IMG/VR virus record: IMGVR_UViG_3300013104_000001
Span: 124,001 to 188,000 of that record
Length of the DNA: 64,000 nucleotides
Reading direction: 5' to 3' (one strand)
The number at the start of each line of letters is the position of its first letter. Within the stretch, counting starts at the first letter, position 1. The notes below the pieces were generated by a model. The model was given only the letters and a program-made list of their open reading frames with translations. It was not told the origin of the DNA and ran no database searches. Shown here piece after piece: positions 4,604 to 10,909 of the stretch. Position numbers and translations under genes: made by a program.

Positions 4604-5995
4604 ATGTCAATCTTGTCATTCGGCGAGTATGTTGAGAAGTCACGCCCTATTCGTCCGTTTCTGAATATTGGCGCTGGCTTTGACATACCAACCGGAAGCT
4701 ACCGTTTAGGTAAGCACGGTGAATCTATTCTTAATGGTGGTCTTGCTCCCTTTATTGCTATCGTGGGTAAAGGCAACACCTTTAAGACAGCGATCGGTTG
4801 TTTTATGCTAACCCGCGTACTGGAGCGCTACAATAACTCTAACGCCCTGCACTACGACACCGAGTGTACTTTCAGTCCTGAGCGTTTAATCAGTCTGACC
4901 AACCGCCTGGGTCCTGACGCAGCGCTGGAGTGGTTAGAGAACGAACGTGTGTATCTGACCGATGACTCTGTCATTAAAGGTAACCAGTGGTTTAAAAACT
5001 CTGTTCAACTTTATGCAGAAGCGAAAGGTAAAGGTAAGACCGGTACCCTGCCGTTTGTTGATAAAGACGGCAATCTGATCAAGCACCCATACCCAACCGT
5101 CAACTTCGGCGACTCCATGTCTGAGATGAAATTCAACGACCTGGAAAAGAACTACGCCAAGATGGAGATCGGCCAGGGTGAAATGCAGACCGAAGCCATG
5201 CGTGTGTCAAACGCCAAACGCATGTTAATCGAGAAGACACAAGGTTACGCCAACGCCGGTGGCCTGTATGTGATCATGACTGCGCACTTGGGCAAAGAAC
5301 TCAACCTTGATGGTAAACCACAAGAGAAGAAAACCACCTTCATGAAACAAGGTGACAAGATCTCTAAGGTACCTTCACAGATTCTGTCTCTGCCAAACAA
5401 CGTCTGGGAAATCTCAACCGGTACACAGCTCATTGATAAGAACACCAAAGAGTGGATGTATCCAAAAGCAGGTCGTGATGATGTGGATACCAACGGTAAC
5501 CCAGATCTGATCACCCTGGTTGCGAAGAACCTGCGCGGTAAGAACGGTCCTTCTGGTGTGCCGTGGGAATTTGTGATGTCTCAGTCTGAAGGCCTGCTGC
5601 CACATCTGACCGAGTTCCATTACATCAAGAACGCCGGTCGTTATGGTCTGGGTGGTAATGACCGTAATTACTATGTTGAGTTATGCCCTGATGTGAAACT
5701 GCAGCGTACGCAGGTCCGTGGTAAGATCGATGAAACACCAGAGCTGCAACGCGCCCTGGAGATCACCATGGAAATGTGTCAGATGCGTTTCCTCTGGCAT
5801 ACCCGCGATCCGAAGTACAACATGACTCCAGAAGAACTGCGTGTTGGCCTGGAGAAGAAAGGGTACAAATGGGAGCAGTTACTTAACACCCGTGGGTTCT
5901 GGACTTATGAAGAAGATAATCATCCATTACCATTCTTAAGCACAATGGACTTACTCCGCATGTATCATGATGAGTACCGCCCATACTGGCTGTAA
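4604..5995 (+). CDS. uvsX: UvsX/RecA-like recombinase (phiKZ gp152-like)
   Basis: P-loop GKGNTFKT, YDTE, GDSMS, IMTAHL, KNLRGKNGPSG; size and synteny fit. Confidence 0.88.
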   Translation: MSILSFGEYVEKSRPIRPFLNIGAGFDIPTGSYRLGKHGESILNGGLAPFIAIVGKGNTFKTAIGCFMLTRVLERYNNSNALHYDTECTFSPERLISLTNRLGPDAALEWLENERVYLTDDSVIKGNQWFKNSVQLYAEAKGKGKTGTLPFVDKDGNLIKHPYPTVNFGDSMSEMKFNDLEKNYAKMEIGQGEMQTEAMRVSNAKRMLIEKTQGYANAGGLYVIMTAHLGKELNLDGKPQEKKTTFMKQGDKISKVPSQILSLPNNVWEISTGTQLIDKNTKEWMYPKAGRDDVDTNGNPDLITLVAKNLRGKNGPSGVPWEFVMSQSEGLLPHLTEFHYIKNAGRYGLGGNDRNYYVELCPDVKLQRTQVRGKIDETPELQRALEITMEMCQMRFLWHTRDPKYNMTPEELRVGLEKKGYKWEQLLNTRGFWTYEEDNHPLPFLSTMDLLRMYHDEYRPYWL

Positions 5996-6009: not shown

Positions 6010-6038
6010 AGGAGGGGTTTCCCCTCCTCTTTATACCG
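6010..6038 (+). terminator. hairpin with TATACCG tail
   Basis: AGGAGGGG-TTT-CCCCTCCT-CTT-TATACCG just after uvsX. Confidence 0.7.
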
Positions 6039-6072: not shown

Positions 6073-6492
6073 ATGCTTAATAAAGAAATACGCATTGTCG
6101 TAGCGTCTGTACGAGGCTTCGCAGATGTTGAGCGTTTAAAACTGACTATTGACGGTCTCCTCAAGGATATTTACGAGATGAACGAAGGTCTCGATGATGA
6201 GGATGATGAACTGATTACTGACAAGAAGATCGTGTTTATGATCAATGGCGAGGGGAGAACCGCTGCGGATATTCTGCCAGCGCTTGCCATGGAGCGTAAC
6301 ATCGAAGTGGAAGTACTCAAAGTCGATTGGTCAAAAGGTAAGAAAGCCTTTTTTGATAACTGTGCCGTTTTAGGCTCAAAGTCAACACACGCTATTATTT
6401 TCACGGACAGCAAAGATGACGGGATGCAGACACTGATTAAATCATGTCTCGACGCCGGGTCTCGTGTTCGTAGTTATAGCGCCTCTATCTAA
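6073..6492 (+). CDS. degenerate SLOG (YspA/DUF2493-like) domain protein
   Basis: RIVVASVRGF..., NGEGRTAAD, VDWSKGKKAFFDN, THAIIFTDSKDDG are colinear with YspA-like motifs and with the C-terminal half of 7306..8181. Confidence 0.6.
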   Translation: MLNKEIRIVVASVRGFADVERLKLTIDGLLKDIYEMNEGLDDEDDELITDKKIVFMINGEGRTAADILPALAMERNIEVEVLKVDWSKGKKAFFDNCAVLGSKSTHAIIFTDSKDDGMQTLIKSCLDAGSRVRSYSASI

Positions 6493-6501
6493 GGTGTAAT
6501 C

Positions 6502-6945
6502 ATGATAGCCTCTGAAGCCAACGTCGGTATACTTGATATTAATGTCACCCACGTCATATGCACAGTTAATTGCGAAGGGCATATGGGTCGTGGCATCGCC
6601 TTGTATCTACGTAAATGTATTCCGGGGCTATACGATCGTTATAACGAACTTTGCAAACTTAAGCTGTTAACGGTGGATAAACTTTGGATCTACCGTTCGG
6701 CACCAAAACAGATCCTCTGCTTTCCAACGAAAGACAAGACCTGGGAAGACAGTCGTATCGAATGGATCGAGGCTAATCTGATTAAGCTTCGAAACACGTA
6801 TAAAGAGAAAGGCATTCGCTCTGTGGCAATGCCTCCTCTGGGGTGTGGAAACGGTAACTTAAAATGGGATGAGGTGCGAAGCCTCATTTATGCCATCTTG
6901 GGCGATTGTGACCTGGAAGTCCACATTTGTTTAGGTAGAAAGTAA
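6502..6945 (+). CDS. macrodomain ADP-ribosylhydrolase, DarG/Poa1p-like
   Basis: TVNCEGHMGRGIA, LCFPTK, SVAMPPLGCGNGNLKW closely match DarG-type macrodomain motifs. Confidence 0.9.
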   Translation: MIASEANVGILDINVTHVICTVNCEGHMGRGIALYLRKCIPGLYDRYNELCKLKLLTVDKLWIYRSAPKQILCFPTKDKTWEDSRIEWIEANLIKLRNTYKEKGIRSVAMPPLGCGNGNLKWDEVRSLIYAILGDCDLEVHICLGRK

Positions 6946-6959
6946 ATGAGGGAATTATC

Positions 6960-7313
6960 ATGAATACACTGGTTTTCTTGTATGTACTGGGCAGTATTTA
7001 TACAGTCGATGTCAAACCGATGCCTGATTACAAAACCTGTCGTGCCGCACAAGCTGTACTCGAAAAGGCTACGGCTGAGCAGAAATATAACGACGGACCT
7101 AATAAGACCGAGTGTTATATCGTCGATGAGAGTAAAGGCGGGTTTGTTGTCATTAGTGGTCGTGATCTTGAATTGCAGCGTCAGAGTGCCGAACTCGATC
7201 GATTGTCACGTGAGACTACAGTTAAGCTTACTCATCAGGTTGAAGTAAACGATCCTTCTAAGTCGGTCAAGTTACAACAGTTCTTGAAAGACCAGGAGAA
7301 CGCACATGAGTGA
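6960..7313 (+). CDS. hypothetical protein, hydrophobic N-terminus and a Cys pair
   Basis: GAGGG RBS; overlaps the next gene by 8 nt. Confidence 0.7.
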   Translation: MNTLVFLYVLGSIYTVDVKPMPDYKTCRAAQAVLEKATAEQKYNDGPNKTECYIVDESKGGFVVISGRDLELQRQSAELDRLSRETTVKLTHQVEVNDPSKSVKLQQFLKDQENAHE

Positions 7314-8181
7314 TGCTCGCGTAGTACCCGATCCGGCCAAGGACGGGGTTACCCACATCAACATTTATACCAAGGGGATGACTTGGCTTGGACAGCAGTT
7401 ATCCAACATGTCGTACTACAGCTTCGCCCATCCTAAACACGGGGTGTTCGGATCACTGGAGGCGTATTGGTATTGGTTAGCAACTGGTCAGCAGCACGAA
7501 GAACTCCGTAACCTGGCAGGTTTTAAAGCAAAGCTTGTTGGTAAACAGTTTGAACGTGTACCGGTGGATAACTTTGAAGAGCAGTTCAAGTTCGCCATGC
7601 AATTACGTTTAGAACAGAACCCGATCATTGCCAAAGCGCTGTCTGAATCACTGCTGCCGTTTGAGCACTATTTCTACTATAGTGGGAAAGTGGTCGATCA
7701 GTCAGATGCACATCGTTGGCAGCTCGACTTCTATGAACAATGGCGTAAAGATCATCCTGTTGAAGATCCATCGATTGCGCTTCTTATTTCCGGTTCTCGT
7801 AAAGAGAAGAACTACGAAAGCTTTAAGAAGATCGTAATGGATTACTTAGCGCCTTATCGTGAAAAGATTAAGGACAGCTACAAGATCGGGATTATCTCAG
7901 GGTTGGCGTGGGAAGGTCCAGATGACATGGCGATTCGTTTATGCCGTGAGGAAGGCTTCATGCTGATCGGTGTGCCAGCTAAATGGAATGAGCAAGGCAA
8001 GGCAGCGGGGATGATCCGTAATGGCGTGATGGGGCGCTTATGCACTCAGGCGTTGGTCTTCTGGGATGGTGAGTCACCAGGGACAAAAGGCCAGATTGAC
8101 TATTTGAAGAAAAATAATATAGACCATCTGGTTTATATTCACGGGCAACACGATCCCGAGTGGAAATCATCGGAACAATGA
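7306..8181 (+). CDS. NADAR-like domain fused to SLOG (YspA/DUF2493) domain
   Basis: N-half: LSNM..F..HGVFGSLEAYW, AKLVGK, AMQLRLEQNP (NADAR-like). C-half: ISGSR, IISGLA.EGPD, AKWNEQGKAAGMIRN, VFWDGESPGTK (YspA SLOG). Confidence 0.75.
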   Translation: MSDARVVPDPAKDGVTHINIYTKGMTWLGQQLSNMSYYSFAHPKHGVFGSLEAYWYWLATGQQHEELRNLAGFKAKLVGKQFERVPVDNFEEQFKFAMQLRLEQNPIIAKALSESLLPFEHYFYYSGKVVDQSDAHRWQLDFYEQWRKDHPVEDPSIALLISGSRKEKNYESFKKIVMDYLAPYREKIKDSYKIGIISGLAWEGPDDMAIRLCREEGFMLIGVPAKWNEQGKAAGMIRNGVMGRLCTQALVFWDGESPGTKGQIDYLKKNNIDHLVYIHGQHDPEWKSSEQ

Positions 8182-8193
8182 GAGGGAGTCATC

Positions 8194-8478
8194 ATGTCAA
8201 CATTGCAGCTCGCGGTTAATAGCGAATACTTTGATGCCATGAAAGATGGGTCAAAACCGGAAGAGTATCGTTTGGTTAATAACTACTGGACCAAGCGTTT
8301 ACTTAACCGGGATTACGATCGTCTGGTGATTACCAAAGGTTATCCAAATCGCGCCGATACATCACGGCGCATTGAGGTGCCTTATAATGGCTATCAAATA
8401 AAAACCATTACTCATCCTCACTTCGGTGATCAGCCCGTGAATGTTTTCGCCATTAAAGTAAATCTGGAGAAACCATGA
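8194..8478 (+). CDS. ASCH domain protein
   Basis: LQLAVNSEYFDAMKDGSKPEEYR is the ASCH G-x-K-x-x-E-x-R signature; TKGYP. Confidence 0.85.
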   Translation: MSTLQLAVNSEYFDAMKDGSKPEEYRLVNNYWTKRLLNRDYDRLVITKGYPNRADTSRRIEVPYNGYQIKTITHPHFGDQPVNVFAIKVNLEKP

Positions 8479-9149
8479 ACGCAGCACGCCAGCAAGTCCA
8501 GGAGTTCATCCTGACTTCTATTGATGAAATCATGCCCGGTTCTAAAAACCGGGATATTTACGTAGACTTCTTTGCCCGTCAATCCGACGAGGCATTTGAA
8601 GCACTGATGCAGCGCATGGAAGAGGATGAAGAGATCTTTCCGTTCTACCATCCTAATTTCACCGGGAAGGTGATCGATGTGGAGCGTGTGATTGGGTTGA
8701 TTGAGAAACACGGCGATACCATTATGGAACAGCTGTATGACATCGATCCAGAAACCGGTCTACAGTATCTGACACCACTTAAGTATCCGGTGCTGTTATT
8801 GCCACTGCGTATTCAGCAGCAGAAGCTGCAGAAGAAAATGTCAGTGCCAAAAGACAACAATCACATCGATGACCTGACCAACCAGCCAACGACCGAATCC
8901 AAGGGCGCATCACTCTCATACCCAGAAGTACAGATCCTGTATGCAATGGGCGGTGATAAGATCCTGGAAGAGACCATGAAGGTTCGTGGTGGCGATGAGA
9001 AAGCTTTCCGTGATTATAACAATGCCATTATTGCAGACGGCGGCGTGACCATCGGAGCGATCAGTTCAAGTAAAACCAAAGTTAAATCGACTCTGACGGT
9101 ACAGACTATTCTAGAGGCGATGCACTTGAGCAACAACCTGGCTAAATAA
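8475..9149 (+). CDS. virion RNA polymerase beta subunit, C-terminal fragment (phiKZ gp149-like)
   Basis: RIQQQKLQKKMS, IDDLTNQPT.ESKGASLSYPE, ETMKVRGGD correspond to the RpoB C-terminus. Confidence 0.85.
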   Translation: MNAARQQVQEFILTSIDEIMPGSKNRDIYVDFFARQSDEAFEALMQRMEEDEEIFPFYHPNFTGKVIDVERVIGLIEKHGDTIMEQLYDIDPETGLQYLTPLKYPVLLLPLRIQQQKLQKKMSVPKDNNHIDDLTNQPTTESKGASLSYPEVQILYAMGGDKILEETMKVRGGDEKAFRDYNNAIIADGGVTIGAISSSKTKVKSTLTVQTILEAMHLSNNLAK

Positions 9150-9169
9150 GTCAGGTAAAGGAATGCAAG

Positions 9170-9736
9170 ATGAGTAGTCTTATCAGTCAATTTAGTGGTA
9201 AAAATAAAGTCGATCTTAATCCGTTAGAACTTGACTTGCATGTGCAGAGAGTCGTTCATGATTATGTTGGTTCTTACCTACGGAACCGCATCTATCTTGC
9301 ACGCACTGCTAACATCGATATAAAGACTGATGTCAATTACACGACTGTCGTAGAGTTCATCGCTTATGTGAACAACGAATTGAACTTTATCCGCATGTGG
9401 AATAAAGCCTCAATGAAAGATGAGATCTGGCCAAATATCATCAATGATGAAAACATCCTGCAGTTTGTTTTCAAAGGCACGACTCACGTCAGTGTACAAT
9501 CGTTTATTAGCGATGAGCAATTTGGTAAACTGGTGTCGCATATCGCCGGTGCGCTGAGTTGTCTCTCGTTTCCTGATAACGATATTATCGATGATGATTC
9601 TTTTGTTAAGGTTCTGCCACGTAACGATGAACTGACTGATCTTTTTACAAAGAACCAGTGGGCGTTGTTTTTGTATTACTTAACCCGAATCGATATTATC
9701 AGCATGGTAACAGGTGGGGGCACATCTGATGAGTAA
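9170..9736 (+). CDS. hypothetical protein
   Basis: AAGGA RBS; part of the operon. Confidence 0.7.
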   Translation: MSSLISQFSGKNKVDLNPLELDLHVQRVVHDYVGSYLRNRIYLARTANIDIKTDVNYTTVVEFIAYVNNELNFIRMWNKASMKDEIWPNIINDENILQFVFKGTTHVSVQSFISDEQFGKLVSHIAGALSCLSFPDNDIIDDDSFVKVLPRNDELTDLFTKNQWALFLYYLTRIDIISMVTGGGTSDE

Positions 9737-10457
9737 TGGCGATCAAATTAACTGTTATATCCCGCTGGATGCTTTGCTTGATACACGTATCGGTACTATC
9801 GATAAGATCGCCGGTGAAGCAGGGTTAAACTTGGTGGCTGACTGGTATCATACTCGCACGTCGGATAAGTTCAACCGTAAAGGAACTGACCTTACCCAAG
9901 AGCGTTATGATGCGGCGTGGAAGCTTCGTGATGAGGATACCTTAAAACGTACTCGCATGACTTTCGTACCGCAATACCTGTTGCATCTGGTGAGTCGCTA
10001 TAACACCTCACACGGCATGCCAGTCATGGCAGCGAATTACAAGATCACCATCAACCTGTGGCCGTATAAGCTCCCGCCTGAGCGTGTGCAGCAGTTACAA
10101 GAGATCATGCAGACCTTTACGTCAGGGGTTGCAGAGATCGCGGTTGATTACATTGATCCTGCTGATTTGTCGGTTGCGTATTTGAAGGCGACATATTCCC
10201 TCTGCATTATGTACGAGTTCAATGCGTGGTTAAACATGCATAAGGATGAGTTTACGAAAGTGCAGATGCCGGGTACTGTGATTATCGCACCAGAGTTATA
10301 TCTGGCTGACGTACCGGATGAATTGATTGATGCTGCGAAGAAGACGGATGGCTTTGCGGGGGTGAGTTTAGCGCTGTGTGCATTATGCACGGTGGTGTTC
10401 TTAGATGTAAGGTTGTTCTCCTACGTCACCGATACACCACCGGTCATCGATGGTTAG
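9729..10457 (+). CDS. conserved phiKZ-like protein (gp147-like)
   Basis: YIPLDALLDTRIGTI N-terminal motif and synteny; ATG at 9729 overlaps the upstream stop. Confidence 0.65.
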   Translation: MSNGDQINCYIPLDALLDTRIGTIDKIAGEAGLNLVADWYHTRTSDKFNRKGTDLTQERYDAAWKLRDEDTLKRTRMTFVPQYLLHLVSRYNTSHGMPVMAANYKITINLWPYKLPPERVQQLQEIMQTFTSGVAEIAVDYIDPADLSVAYLKATYSLCIMYEFNAWLNMHKDEFTKVQMPGTVIIAPELYLADVPDELIDAAKKTDGFAGVSLALCALCTVVFLDVRLFSYVTDTPPVIDG

Positions 10458-10909
10458 CTTTTCTTCTGTCCAGGGGTCATGATGTCATCGTACTCGATGT
10501 GCTCAACCCCTTGGCGGGTTTCACCATCTTTGTAATCCGCCTGTGGCAGTTGATTCTGATCGATCTGTGGTGCCGCTTGCGGTTGTGAACCAGGCAGGTC
10601 TGTACGCAGTGCCAAACCACCGGCACTCAATACCTGTTTGATTACGTTGCCCACGATAGCAGCCTGTGCTTCATCAGACTCTTGCGCCTTAGTTTCCAGA
10701 TCAAGACGTTGGCGGTTGATGATTGATTTGTCGATATCGGACATTGAAGTTAAAGCGATCTTCAACATCTTTGGATCTTGTCGAGTAGCAGGAATGATGG
10801 CACCGCTTTCGCTATCCTTTTCATCAAGGATATCTTCAACGATACCTAAGCGACGCATTTGCAAACGACGCATCAAGGCCCCATCATCTAATTCAAAGTC
10901 CGTAGCCAT
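10454..10909 (-). CDS. conserved helical protein of unknown function
   Basis: GGAGG RBS; minus-strand TATG at 10941-10944 upstream. Confidence 0.75.
   Translation of the reverse strand: MATDFELDDGALMRRLQMRRLGIVEDILDEKDSESGAIIPATRQDPKMLKIALTSMSDIDKSIINRQRLDLETKAQESDEAQAAIVGNVIKQVLSAGGLALRTDLPGSQPQAAPQIDQNQLPQADYKDGETRQGVEHIEYDDIMTPGQKKS

What the first reader, a model, noticed from the sequence alone, without database searches (positions are those of the whole stretch)
6073..8478. Compact ADP-ribose counter-defence operon: SLOG, DarG-like macrodomain, X, NADAR-like/SLOG fusion, ASCH
Seen: five tightly packed genes between uvsX and the vRNAP beta-C gene. The macrodomain keeps the DarG-type TVN-x-x-G-x-MG-x-GIA, FPTK and PPLGCGNG motifs. 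Established: DarG macrodomains remove thymidine-linked ADP-ribose placed by DarT2; NADAR enzymes remove guanine-linked ADP-ribose placed by DarT1; SLOG domains bind nucleotide ligands, including the gcADPR signal in Thoeris ThsA; ASCH domains bind or process modified nucleosides/RNA. Inference: one operon could erase both chemistries of DNA ADP-ribosylation and sense or sequester ADPR-derived signals, acting as a multi-arm anti-DarTG/anti-NAD-signalling system. The individual domains are known in jumbo phages; the combination and its placement beside the recombinase are what stand out.
Basis: partly seen in the sequence, partly recalled or inferred. Interest (0 to 1): 0.8.

Follow-up and report, generated by a model that had tools for sequence, protein, structure and literature searches.

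The report
Phage ADP-ribose removal gene cluster
A nucleus-forming jumbo phage carries, next to its recombinase gene, a known-type enzyme that strips ADP-ribose marks from thymine in DNA and a second, unannotated enzyme predicted to do the same for guanine; together they probably undo a bacterial DNA-marking defence (DarTG), a plausible and testable extension of recently published work rather than a new kind of system.

Summary
Five tightly packed + strand genes lie at 6073-8478 between a UvsX-like recombinase and a virion RNA polymerase beta subunit, and all four domain calls check out.

- **ORF2** is a standalone DarG2-type macrodomain with both catalytic residues. It belongs to the chimallivirus AdfM family, shown in 2026 to remove DarT2 marks inside the phage nucleus.
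- **ORF4** is a fusion of two domains. The N-domain has no Pfam match but is a remote homologue of T4 gp30.3/AdfN, the anti-DarT1 NADAR. The C-domain is a YAcAr/DprA-like SLOG.
- **ORF4's RAY orthologue** (gp153, labelled "DprA") localises to the phage nucleus.
- **ORF1** is a SLOG paralogue with degenerate motifs.

Sister phages fuse macro, NADAR-like and SLOG into one protein at this same slot. Two near-identical Chaseviridae phages carry either the macro or the NADAR-like gene in one slot.

ORF3 (orphan) and ORF5 (ASCH fold, about 75% identical to lambdoid prophage genes) are lineage-specific insertions, not core parts.

The dual anti-DarT reading is plausible. The signal-sponge reading has no specific support. 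Macro/NADAR/SLOG combinations in jumbo phages were already catalogued computationally. Verdict: new member of a known kind, moderate interest.

The parts
4604..5995 (+). Upstream flank: UvsX-like recombinase (463 aa)
   Evidence: phrog_97 UvsX-like recombinase, 1.2e-54. 90% aa identity to AH06 'RecA-like DNA recombinase'. RAY orthologue gp150 is nuclear.
6010..6028 (+). GC-rich hairpin (8-bp stem AGGAGGGG / CCCCTCCT, loop TTT) followed by CTTTAT. Terminator-like element between uvsX and ORF1.
   Evidence: Read directly from the sequence and folded. Stem positions differ on both arms between window, AH06/RAY and SA002 while pairing is kept. Not picked up by the simple terminator scan because the T-run is short.
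6073..6492 (+). ORF1: divergent SLOG paralogue (139 aa) with degenerate signature motifs; probably non-catalytic
   Evidence: Pfam YAcAr 1.3e-3, sub-threshold. phrog_289 2e-9. Matches an HMM built from the ORF4-family SLOG domain at E 1.1e-7 over residues 6-127. GSR becomes SVR, and KAAGMIRN becomes KKAFFDNC. dN/dS 0.09. Present at the same slot in AH06, RAY, SA002, L010, L011 and L013.
6502..6945 (+). ORF2: standalone DarG2-type macrodomain (147 aa), AdfM family
   Evidence: Pfam Macro 4.5e-11. NCBIfam antitoxin_DarG 4e-39, covering only model positions 8-145 of 338. PADLOC DarG 4.4e-42. PDB M. tuberculosis and T. aquaticus DarG macrodomains 2.6e-23 and 6.6e-21, against TARG1 about 3e-6. phiKZ gp104 (AdfM) 30.5% identity, E 1e-12. 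N23 and K77 align with AdfM N23/K78 and TaqDarG N22/K80.
6960..7313 (+). ORF3 ('X'): lineage-restricted orphan (117 aa) with a hydrophobic N-terminus and two conserved Cys, inserted at the macro / NADAR-like domain boundary
   Evidence: No Pfam, PHROG, NCBIfam or PADLOC family. Only 3 relatives in the 5.8 billion protein set, plus AH06 gp159 at 36%. dN/dS 0.11 against L013. Atlas uninformative, model pLDDT 0.53. Absent in RAY and in the fused forms.
7306..7740 (+). ORF4 N-domain (residues 1-145): gp30.3/AdfN-like NADAR domain, an unannotated subfamily (phrog_652)
   Evidence: No Pfam NADAR hit. phrog_652 5e-32. Foldseek match to PnNADAR 8bau: prob 1.00, E 1.1e-2, TM 0.47. hhalign of the family profile against T4 gp30.3: E 1.1e-5, prob 82%, end to end, score 36.5 against at most 13.3 for 11 controls. 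phmmer with T4 gp30.3 hits family members at 8e-6 to 1e-3. E52 is invariant (T4 E36 / PnNADAR E43). H121 is at least 90% conserved (the last-strand His of phage NADARs). K76 and K80 align with PnNADAR K75 and R79. There is no equivalent of K50/K43.
7759..8181 (+). ORF4 C-domain (residues about 152-291): YAcAr/DprA-like SLOG Rossmannoid domain with intact signature motifs
   Evidence: Pfam YAcAr 8.6e-4, sub-threshold. phrog_289 2.2e-19. 30 of 150 family representatives hit YAcAr, down to 1e-12. Foldseek PDB: ShosA 3.9e-4, DprA 6.3e-4, ThsA SLOG 5.5e-3. BFVD: many 'YspA cpYpsA-related SLOG' proteins at 1e-9 to 1e-6. Invariant G163, R165, G199, A201, G204, D206, K232, A234, G235, R238, N239, S257, G259. 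RAY orthologue gp153 is nuclear.
8194..8478 (+). ORF5: small ASCH-fold protein (94 aa), a lineage-specific insertion related to lambdoid prophage genes
   Evidence: phrog_625 5.7e-42. 70-76% identical to enterobacterial 'ASCH domain-containing protein', which sits in the Gam-RecT-YqaJ-Dam-TraR-[ASCH]-xis-int region of E. coli prophages. 17 of 37 homologues weakly match Pfam ASCH. AF2 model pLDDT 87. Ranks 1-9 and 11-20 of the Foldseek PDB list are ASCH proteins or small archaeal/bacterial structural-genomics proteins, led by 3iuw at 1.5e-2, prob 0.99. Absent in RAY.
8475..9149 (+). Downstream flank: virion RNA polymerase beta subunit fragment (224 aa); its start overlaps the ORF5 stop by 4 nt
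   Evidence: phrog_3233 RNA polymerase beta subunit, 1e-93. RAY annotation 'putative vRNAP beta subunit 2'.

Best explanation
The conserved core of this block is three genes: ORF1, ORF2 and ORF4. I read it as a DNA de-ADP-ribosylation module that works inside the phage nucleus of an Agricanvirus-like chimallivirus.

- **ORF2** is an orphan DarG2-type macrodomain (AdfM family). It hydrolyses ADP-ribose from thymidine in single-stranded DNA and so reverses DarT2.
- **The ORF4 N-domain** is a gp30.3/AdfN-type NADAR-like glycohydrolase. It is predicted to cleave the N-glycosidic ADP-ribose-guanine bond made by DarT1-type enzymes, or a related base-ADPr linkage.
- **The ORF4 C-domain** is a YAcAr/DprA-like SLOG. 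It is predicted to hold the enzyme on single-stranded DNA or on the ADP-ribose moiety.
- **ORF1** is a SLOG paralogue with degenerate motifs, probably a non-catalytic partner of ORF4.
- **ORF3 and ORF5** are later insertions and are probably functionally independent.

What is shown elsewhere for homologues: AdfM activity and nuclear import, AdfN activity, and nuclear localisation of RAY gp153. What is inferred here: orthology or homology of the window's genes to those proteins, activity of the NADAR-like domain, the role of both SLOG domains, and cooperation between the parts.
For: **ORF2**
- DarG hits at 4e-39 and 4.4e-42, and PDB DarG macrodomains at 2.6e-23.
- Catalytic N23 and K77 are conserved and align with phiKZ AdfM.
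- The AdfM family removes DarT2 marks and is imported into the phage nucleus (PMC13309987).

**ORF4 N-domain**
- NADAR fold match to 8bau.
- Significant profile-to-sequence homology with T4 AdfN, with clean controls.
- The Glu, the last-strand His and the two pyrophosphate-facing basic residues are conserved.
- T4 AdfN is a DNA ADP-ribosylglycohydrolase that counters DarTG1 (PMC11825919).

**Localisation and linkage**
- RAY gp153, 73% identical to ORF4, co-localises with phage DNA in the nucleus (PMC10299810).
- Macro + NADAR-like + SLOG occur as one 421-431 aa polypeptide at the same uvsX / vRNAP-beta slot in related jumbo phages. SA002 fuses macro + NADAR-like.
- ST32 and DE15, 93-97% identical in the flanks, carry either the NADAR-like gene or the DarG-like macro gene in one slot upstream of SSB.
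- DarTG occurs in some Erwinia amylovora genomes (PMC13480210).
Against: - No activity was measured for any protein of this window.
- The NADAR-like family has no Pfam NADAR hit.
- It lacks a conserved equivalent of the phosphate-coordinating Lys, which is essential in E. coli C7 NADAR and contributes in T4 AdfN.
- Its links to solved NADARs are weak: hmmsearch E 0.34 and Foldseek E 1.1e-2.
- T4 AdfN is specific to its own phage context, so activity cannot simply be transferred.
- ORF2 is only 30% identical to phiKZ AdfM.
- The SLOG role is open: ssDNA binding, ADPr binding or catalysis.
- Iyer and colleagues favoured soluble ADPr derivatives as substrates for phage Macro/NADAR/SLOG sets.
Confidence: 0.6

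Rival explanations
1. The module processes soluble NAD-derived molecules rather than DNA adducts. These would be cyclic ADPR isomers, ADPr-1''-phosphate or other signals and toxins of host immunity. Macro, NADAR-like and SLOG would each cut a different bond, or the SLOG domains would act as sensors or sponges. This is the Iyer/Burroughs/Aravind model and the first reader's second arm.
For: The published computational proposal covers exactly this domain set in phages (PMC9503650, PMC7824862). The SLOG model also matches the gcADPR-binding SLOG of ThsA (8btp 5.5e-3, 6lhx 1.4e-2). The NADAR-like family is often fused to DUF4326, a predicted phosphatase-like domain (34 of 150).
Against: The macrodomain is specifically DarG2-like (E 1e-23 against 1e-6 for TARG1), and its family is shown to act on DNA. 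The RAY orthologue of ORF4 and AdfM are concentrated in the nucleus with DNA, whereas the known signal-dependent effectors act in the cytoplasm. DprA, which binds ssDNA, matches the SLOG at least as well as ThsA does. No sponge or anti-Thoeris family was hit.
Confidence: 0.2
2. ORF4 (and ORF1) are DprA-like recombination mediators that load or assist the neighbouring UvsX recombinase on single-stranded DNA, as annotated for RAY gp153 and AH06 gp160. The macrodomain would be an unrelated neighbour.
For: DprA is among the best structural matches of the C-domain (3uqz 6.3e-4, 4ljk 2.2e-3). The gene lies one slot downstream of uvsX in all relatives. RAY gp153 is nuclear, like UvsX gp150. Iyer et al. 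suggested DprA/Smf copies as extra ssDNA binders in jumbo phages.
Against: ORF4 itself has no Pfam DNA_processg_A hit; the weak hit is to YAcAr. The N-terminal half is NADAR-like, not the SAM domain of DprA. The same protein is fused to a DarG-like macrodomain in sister phages and to DUF4326 elsewhere, which a pure recombination mediator does not explain. A conserved hairpin separates it from uvsX.
Confidence: 0.1
3. The block acts on RNA: it would reverse RNA ADP-ribosylation or process modified RNA, with the ASCH protein as the RNA-binding or RNA-processing partner.
For: ASCH proteins include RNA-binding and ac4C-processing members, with YqfB and ZmASCH among the fold matches. RNA ADP-ribosylation reversal by macrodomains and NADAR-type enzymes is reported in the literature list. 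The cluster is contiguous with an RNA polymerase subunit gene.
Against: ASCH is absent from RAY-type phages that keep the core. It is shared at about 75% identity with prophages that have no macro/NADAR neighbours. The DarG2-type macrodomains characterised so far act on DNA thymidine.
Confidence: 0.05

Closest known systems
AdfM (phiKZ gp104), the chimallivirus anti-DarT factor macro (Morgan et al., Cell Rep 2026, PMC13309987)
   Same: Standalone DarG2-like macrodomain of about 150 aa encoded by a nucleus-forming jumbo phage. Catalytic Asn and Lys conserved (N23; K77 here, K78 in phiKZ). Detectable sequence homology (E 1e-12). No DarT-binding domain.
   Different: Only 30.5% identity to phiKZ gp104. 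ORF2 is closer to bacterial DarG macrodomains (E 1e-23). Here it is embedded in a SLOG / NADAR-like block, and fused to it in sister phages, whereas phiKZ gp104 has no such neighbours. Activity and localisation were not measured for this protein.
AdfN (T4 gp30.3), the phage NADAR DNA ADP-ribosylglycohydrolase that counters DarTG1 (PMC11825919, PMC11125620)
   Same: Same fold family by profile comparison (hhalign E 1.1e-5). LSNF motif. Catalytic Glu (T4 E36 = E52). The last-strand His that is typical of phage NADARs (H121).
   Different: Not recognised by Pfam NADAR or Phage_30_3 models. A four-residue insertion follows the Glu, and there is no equivalent of K43. Fused to a SLOG domain. Family partners include DUF4326 and Macro. 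Encoded in a nucleus-forming phage, with a nuclear orthologue.
Macro / NADAR / SLOG (YAcAr) / DUF4326 fusions and neighbourhoods in phages and giant viruses (Iyer, Burroughs, Anantharaman, Aravind; PMC7824862, PMC9503650)
   Same: The same set of domains, found both as fusions and as adjacent genes, enriched in jumbo phages, and predicted to counter NAD/ADPr-based immunity.
   Different: Those papers predicted soluble ADPr derivatives as the substrates. The evidence assembled here (DarG2-type macro, AdfN-type NADAR, nuclear localisation, cassette swap) points to DNA adducts instead.
Bacterial DarG antitoxins (DarG2 macrodomain type; DarG1 NADAR type)
   Same: Same catalytic domains as the two antitoxin classes.
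   Different: No DarT toxin gene, no DarT-binding C-terminal domain, and phage-encoded. These are orphan antitoxin-like enzymes rather than TA components.
DprA/Smf recombination mediator
   Same: SLOG Rossmannoid fold of the C-domain. Neighbour of a RecA-family recombinase. Associated with DNA in the cell.
   Different: Lacks the DprA domain architecture. Belongs to the YAcAr branch. The N-terminal half is NADAR-like.

Membership tests
DarG type II antitoxin (NCBIfam NF048014) | Macrodomain with the catalytic Asn and Lys (T. aquaticus N22, K80) | tested here: met
   ORF2 N23 and K77 align with these residues. DarG HMMs score 4e-39 and 4.4e-42.
DarG type II antitoxin (NCBIfam NF048014) | C-terminal DarT-binding domain, with a full-length score above the curated cut-off | tested here: not met
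   ORF2 is 147 aa and covers model positions 8-145 of 338. It scores 134.8 bits against a cut-off of 250.
DarG type II antitoxin (NCBIfam NF048014) | Adjacent DarT toxin gene | tested here: not met
   None of the five ORFs hits a DarT model in PADLOC. The flanking genes are UvsX and the vRNAP beta subunit.
AdfM (chimallivirus anti-DarT factor macro) | Standalone DarG2-like macrodomain encoded by a chimallivirus and homologous to phiKZ gp104 | tested here: met
   The window is Agricanvirus-like. tblastn to the phiKZ gp104 locus gives 30.5% identity, E 1e-12. The alignment shows shared invariant residues.
AdfM (chimallivirus anti-DarT factor macro) | Import into the phage nucleus and removal of DarT2 thymidine-ADPr | not testable with these tools
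   Shown for phiKZ, PhiPA3 and Asesino proteins only.
NADAR superfamily, phage gp30.3/AdfN branch | Match to the curated family models (Pfam PF08719 NADAR or PF08010 Phage_30_3) | tested here: not met
   No hit at E up to 1 for ORF4 or its close homologues. Only 1 of 150 family representatives hits Phage_30_3, at 5e-7.
NADAR superfamily, phage gp30.3/AdfN branch | YbiA-like fold and detectable homology to a characterised member | tested here: met
   Foldseek 8bau: prob 1.00, E 1.1e-2, TM 0.47. hhalign against T4 gp30.3: E 1.1e-5, prob 82%, with controls at most 13.3 against 36.5. phmmer with T4 gp30.3 finds family members at 8e-6. hmmsearch finds 8bau only at E 0.34.
NADAR superfamily, phage gp30.3/AdfN branch | Distal-ribose Glu (PnNADAR E43 / T4 E36) and the last-strand catalytic residue (His in phage NADARs) | tested here: met
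   E52 is invariant in 150 representatives. H121 is at least 90% conserved and aligns with the T4 His.
NADAR superfamily, phage gp30.3/AdfN branch | Phosphate-coordinating Lys seven residues after the Glu (PnNADAR K50, E. coli C7 K95, T4 K43) | tested here: not met
   Position +7 is Ala59 and is variable across the family. The hhalign-equivalent position is Gln63, also variable. K76 and K80 do align with PnNADAR K75 and R79.
NADAR superfamily, phage gp30.3/AdfN branch | Hydrolysis of guanine-linked ADP-ribose on DNA | not testable with these tools
   This needs an enzyme assay.
SLOG superfamily, YAcAr (PF10686) family: ORF4 C-domain | Rossmannoid SLOG fold with the family's Gly-rich and polar motifs | tested here: met
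   Pfam YAcAr scores 19.5 bits, below the 28.2 cut-off, but 30 of 150 relatives hit it, down to 1e-12. Foldseek matches DprA, ShosA and ThsA and many BFVD YspA/cpYpsA SLOG proteins. Motif residues are invariant.
SLOG superfamily, YAcAr (PF10686) family: ORF1 | Homology to SLOG, plus retention of the signature motifs | tested here: inconclusive
   Homology is met: E 1.1e-7 to the ORF4-type SLOG HMM, and Pfam YAcAr 1.3e-3. Most signature residues are replaced, so ligand binding or catalysis is doubtful. No structure model was made.
ASCH domain (PF04266): ORF5 | ASCH/PUA-like beta-barrel fold and a family model match | tested here: inconclusive
   ORF5 itself has no Pfam hit. 17 of 37 homologues match weakly, best 1.7e-3. 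The AF2 model has pLDDT 87. Ranks 1-9 and 11-20 of the Foldseek PDB list are ASCH proteins or small archaeal/bacterial structural-genomics proteins, but the best E-value is only 1.5e-2 and TM is about 0.5. NCBI names its close homologues ASCH.
DprA/Smf recombination mediator | DNA_processg_A model match and DprA domain architecture | tested here: not met
   ORF4 has no PF02481 hit. Its N-terminal half is NADAR-like. Only 9 of 150 family representatives touch PF02481 weakly.

The most novel reading that the evidence does not exclude
The ORF4 N-domain family (phrog_652) has at least 1,863 clusters at 50% identity and occurs in 562 sequenced phages, where the records sampled label it hypothetical. 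It may be a distinct NADAR branch that has replaced the canonical phosphate-binding Lys. Fused to a DprA-like SLOG, it would work as a single-stranded-DNA-targeted base-ADPr glycohydrolase inside the phage nucleus. Its specificity might go beyond DarT1 guanine marks, to other bases or other ARTs. Together with AdfM and a degenerate SLOG partner it would form a dedicated viral 'DNA ADP-ribose repair' complex. Under this reading RAY gp153 has been mislabelled as DprA.
Probability: 0.25. Interest if true: 0.65.

Novelty: new member of a known kind. Interest (0 to 1): 0.45.

Why it matters
The phage nucleus was thought to shield chimallivirus DNA from DNA-targeting immunity. The 2026 AdfM work showed that the shield leaks for DarT2.

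If the neighbouring, and elsewhere fused, NADAR-like/SLOG protein is the matching anti-DarT1 enzyme, these phages carry a complete two-chemistry eraser for DNA ADP-ribosylation in one block.

That would have three consequences:
- It would re-annotate a widespread 'hypothetical' or 'DprA-like' phage family.
- It would give a function to viral SLOG domains.
- It would predict host-range effects on DarTG-carrying Erwinia, Pantoea and enterobacterial strains, which matters for phage biocontrol of fire blight.

All of this can be tested directly with standard toxin-rescue and oligonucleotide assays.

Tried and rejected
- **Direct sequence routes to NADAR failed or were weak.** Pfam gave no hit. PDB phmmer and a shallow profile gave nothing. 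A deeper profile found 8bau only at E 0.34. The link rests on hhalign, phmmer to T4 gp30.3 and Foldseek.
- **Synteny with phiKZ is rejected.** gp101 is not UvsX-like, and no SLOG or NADAR-like genes flank gp104.
- **ASCH by sequence against PDB gave nothing**. Only the fold search supports it.
- **ORF3 stayed unexplained.** Family libraries, the 5.8 billion protein search and the Atlas gave no lead. The weak Spi-inhibitor Pfam hit (5.7e-3, below cut-off) was dismissed.
- **The sigma-70 promoter scan was uninformative.** It found 10 sites against 9.9 expected, and this promoter type is not relevant for phage-RNAP-driven transcription.
- **No RNA evidence.** No RNA run holds this metagenomic phage.
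- **No other copies.** No other macro, NADAR-like, SLOG or ASCH copy was found in the 64 kb window.
- **Anti-Thoeris sponge reading.** I considered it and found nothing that favours ThsA-like ligand binding over DprA-like DNA binding.

Full report
**What is there**

The window is a piece of an Agricanvirus-like nucleus-forming jumbo phage (Chimalliviridae). It is 79.6% identical at the nucleotide level to Erwinia phage AH06 and about 82% over partial matches to the RAY/Ea35-70 group. It was assembled from a rhizosphere metagenome.

Five + strand ORFs lie at exactly the reported coordinates:

| ORF | Coordinates | Length |
|---|---|---|
| ORF1 | 6073-6492 | 139 aa |
| ORF2 | 6502-6945 | 147 aa |
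| ORF3 | 6960-7313 | 117 aa |
| ORF4 | 7306-8181 | 291 aa |
| ORF5 | 8194-8478 | 94 aa |

Spacers or overlaps are +9, +14, -8 and +12 nt. Each ORF has a purine-rich ribosome-binding site. All five are under purifying selection against a related metagenomic phage, L013 (dN/dS 0.03-0.11; against AH06).

Upstream is a UvsX-like recombinase and downstream a virion RNA polymerase beta fragment.

Two caveats apply:
- Tight packing continues past 8478 through the vRNAP gene to about 10457, so the five genes are not a self-contained transcription unit at the 3' side.
- A GC-rich hairpin at 6010-6028, kept through changes on both arms in AH06, RAY and SA002, separates the block from uvsX.

**ORF2**

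ORF2 is a DarG2-type macrodomain. The evidence:
- Pfam Macro 4.5e-11.
- NCBIfam antitoxin_DarG 4e-39, but only over the macrodomain part of the model and below its cut-off.
- PADLOC DarG 4.4e-42.
- Best solved relatives are the M. tuberculosis and T. aquaticus DarG macrodomains (2.6e-23, 6.6e-21), well ahead of TARG1 at about 3e-6.

The quoted motifs are real. N23 and K77 align with T. aquaticus DarG N22/K80 and phiKZ gp104 N23/K78.

Morgan et al. 2026 (PMC13309987) named phiKZ gp104 AdfM. They showed that it removes DarT2 thymidine-ADPr, rescues DarT2 toxicity and is imported into the phage nucleus, and that such proteins occur in about half of chimalliviruses. ORF2 matches the phiKZ gene at 30.5% identity, E 1e-12.

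ORF2 is therefore a member of a family that is already characterised. It is not a DarG antitoxin proper, because it has no DarT-binding domain and no DarT neighbour.

**ORF4**

The AlphaFold model (pLDDT 86) has two domains.

*C-domain.* It matches ShosA, DprA and the ThsA SLOG among solved structures, and many 'YspA cpYpsA-related SLOG' viral proteins in BFVD. Pfam YAcAr is sub-threshold for ORF4 itself, but it is significant in 30 of 150 family representatives. The family's motif residues are invariant.

*N-domain (residues 1-145).* It has no Pfam or PDB sequence hit. It belongs to phrog_652, a large family:
- 1,863 clusters at 50% identity.
- 562 phage genomes, labelled hypothetical in the records sampled.

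Three lines tie this domain to NADAR:
- Foldseek matches the Phytophthora NADAR-ADPr structure 8bau (prob 1.00, E 1.1e-2).
- A profile of the family aligns end to end with T4 gp30.3 (hhalign E 1.1e-5, prob 82%). A reversed control and ten shuffled controls score at most 13.3, against 36.5 for the real sequence.
- T4 gp30.3 itself finds family members by phmmer at 8e-6 to 1e-3.

T4 gp30.3 is AdfN, the NADAR DNA ADP-ribosylglycohydrolase that defeats DarTG1 (PMC11825919).

Residue by residue:
- The distal-ribose Glu is invariant (E52 = T4 E36 = PnNADAR E43).
- The last-strand catalytic residue is His (H121, at least 90% conserved), which is the hallmark of phage NADARs (PMC11125620; PMC11543638).
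- K76 and K80 align with the pyrophosphate-facing K75 and R79 of PnNADAR.
- The Lys seven residues after the Glu has no conserved equivalent. That Lys is essential in E. coli C7 NADAR and contributes in AdfN.

'NADAR-like' is therefore the right description. The fold and most of the active site are present, but one defining residue is missing, so hydrolase activity is an inference.

**ORF1**

ORF1 is a SLOG paralogue. It matches an HMM built from the ORF4-type SLOG at E 1.1e-7 over nearly its whole length, phrog_289 at 2e-9, and Pfam YAcAr weakly.

Most signature residues are replaced: GSR becomes SVR, and KAAGMIRN becomes KKAFFDNC. Even so, it is conserved at this slot in every relative examined, with dN/dS 0.09. 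I read it as a non-catalytic partner. This is inference.

**ORF3 and ORF5 are add-ons**

RAY-type phages have ORF1, macro and NADAR-like/SLOG only.

ORF3 is an orphan with three relatives in 5.8 billion proteins, plus AH06 gp159. It lies exactly where macro and NADAR-like domains are joined in the fused proteins. It is a real gene (dN/dS 0.11), but nothing explains it.

ORF5 has an ASCH fold. Its AF2 model has pLDDT 87, and ranks 1-9 and 11-20 of the Foldseek list are ASCH proteins or small archaeal/bacterial structural-genomics proteins, though with weak E-values. Its homologues show weak Pfam ASCH/DUF3850 signals.

ORF5 is 70-76% identical to 'ASCH domain-containing proteins' of Escherichia, Klebsiella, Citrobacter and Salmonella. 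Those genes sit in the early-left region of lambdoid prophages, between Dam/TraR-like genes and xis-int. That is far closer than the core genes are to any enterobacterial element, so ORF5 looks recently acquired. It has no ADPr-linked context elsewhere.

**Evidence that the core parts work together**

- In related metagenomic jumbo phages, the slot between the ORF1 homologue and vRNAP beta holds one 421-431 aa protein: macro + NADAR-like + SLOG.
- Salmonella phage SA002 has macro + NADAR-like fused. The next gene carries a macro C-terminal remnant + NADAR-like + SLOG.
- Across the N-domain family, the partners are DUF4326 (34 of 150), YAcAr SLOG (30), DprA-like (9) and Macro (3).
- E. coli phages ST32 and DE15 (Chaseviridae) are 93-97% identical in their flanks. 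In one early slot just upstream of the SSB gene, ST32 carries the NADAR-like gene and DE15 carries a DarG-like macrodomain gene. This is the pattern expected of interchangeable counter-defence cassettes.
- Prichard et al. 2023 (PMC10299810) found RAY gp153, the 73%-identical orthologue of ORF4 annotated as DprA, with phage DNA in the nucleus.
- DarTG is present in some Erwinia amylovora genomes.

**Most likely mechanism**

The core is a nuclear DNA de-ADP-ribosylation module.
- ORF2 reverses DarT2 thymidine marks. This is shown for family members.
- The NADAR-like domain reverses DarT1-type guanine marks or a related base adduct. This is inferred from homology to AdfN.
- The SLOG domain tethers the enzyme to single-stranded DNA or binds the ADPr moiety. 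This is inferred from the DprA and ThsA structural matches.
- ORF1 is a degenerate partner.

I put this at about 0.6.

**Rivals**

| Rival | Weight | For | Against |
|---|---|---|---|
| A DprA-like recombination mediator for UvsX | 0.1 | Structural match; position; nuclear | Fusions to macro, NADAR and DUF4326; missing DprA architecture |
| An RNA-directed function with ASCH | 0.05 | ASCH RNA-related members; vRNAP neighbour | ASCH is not a conserved member |

**Comparison with what is known, and novelty**

The macrodomain is a member of the published AdfM family. Macro/NADAR/SLOG(/DUF4326) fusions and neighbourhoods in jumbo phages were catalogued by Iyer et al. in 2021 and 2022.

I found three things unstated in the papers read:
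- The widespread phrog_652 domain, and with it RAY gp153 'DprA', is an AdfN-like NADAR.
- In Agricanvirus-type chimalliviruses AdfM is physically coupled, and in relatives fused, to that domain.
- Macro and NADAR-like genes swap at one locus in Chaseviridae.

This makes the finding a new member of a known kind that carries a concrete, testable hypothesis: a two-chemistry anti-DarT block. It is not a new system. I score interest at 0.45.

Noticed in passing
L014:2204-2968 (Escherichia phage ST32) versus L015:2405-2932 (Escherichia phage DE15): Two Carltongylesvirus phages are 93-97% identical in their flanks. In the same early slot upstream of the SSB gene, one carries the NADAR-like gene (ST32 gp18) and the other a DarG-like macrodomain gene (DE15). 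This is a cassette swap.
   Followed up: partly
L005:5001-6877 (Salmonella phage SA002): Macro + NADAR-like are fused in one gene. The next gene begins with a strong match to the macro C-terminus (HMM positions 95-146, E 3e-23), followed by a second NADAR-like domain and the SLOG. This is either a tandem partial duplication or an assembly artefact.
   Followed up: partly
window 6010-6028: A terminator-like hairpin lies directly after the uvsX stop codon. Its stem is kept through changes on both arms in AH06, RAY and SA002. It is followed by a conserved stretch (TTATACCGTCAGTAGAGGGAA) that could hold a phage promoter.
   Followed up: partly
L006-L009:5001-5327 (E. coli prophages at the icd locus): Close homologues of ORF5 (ASCH-like, about 70% identity) sit in lambdoid prophages between Dam/TraR-like genes and DUF4222-xis-int, downstream of Gam-RecT-YqaJ. 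So this small gene lies near recombination genes in both settings.
   Followed up: no
window 8475-10457: The vRNAP beta fragment and two conserved genes of unknown function (phrog_10888, phrog_3328) follow with overlaps or short gaps on the same strand, up to a convergent gene at 10454-10909. The transcription unit probably extends well beyond the five ORFs.
   Followed up: no
RAY gp153 / AH06 gp160 (L002:5379-6260, L001:5695-6573): Public annotations call the ORF4 orthologues 'DprA-like' or 'DNA processing protein A', and call ORF1 'DNA binding protein'. The N-terminal NADAR-like half is not annotated anywhere in the records sampled.
   Followed up: yes
alignment A3 /: DUF4326 is the commonest fusion partner of the NADAR-like domain (34 of 150 representatives), more common than SLOG or Macro. 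Its function is unknown; Iyer et al. predict a phosphatase-like role.
   Followed up: no
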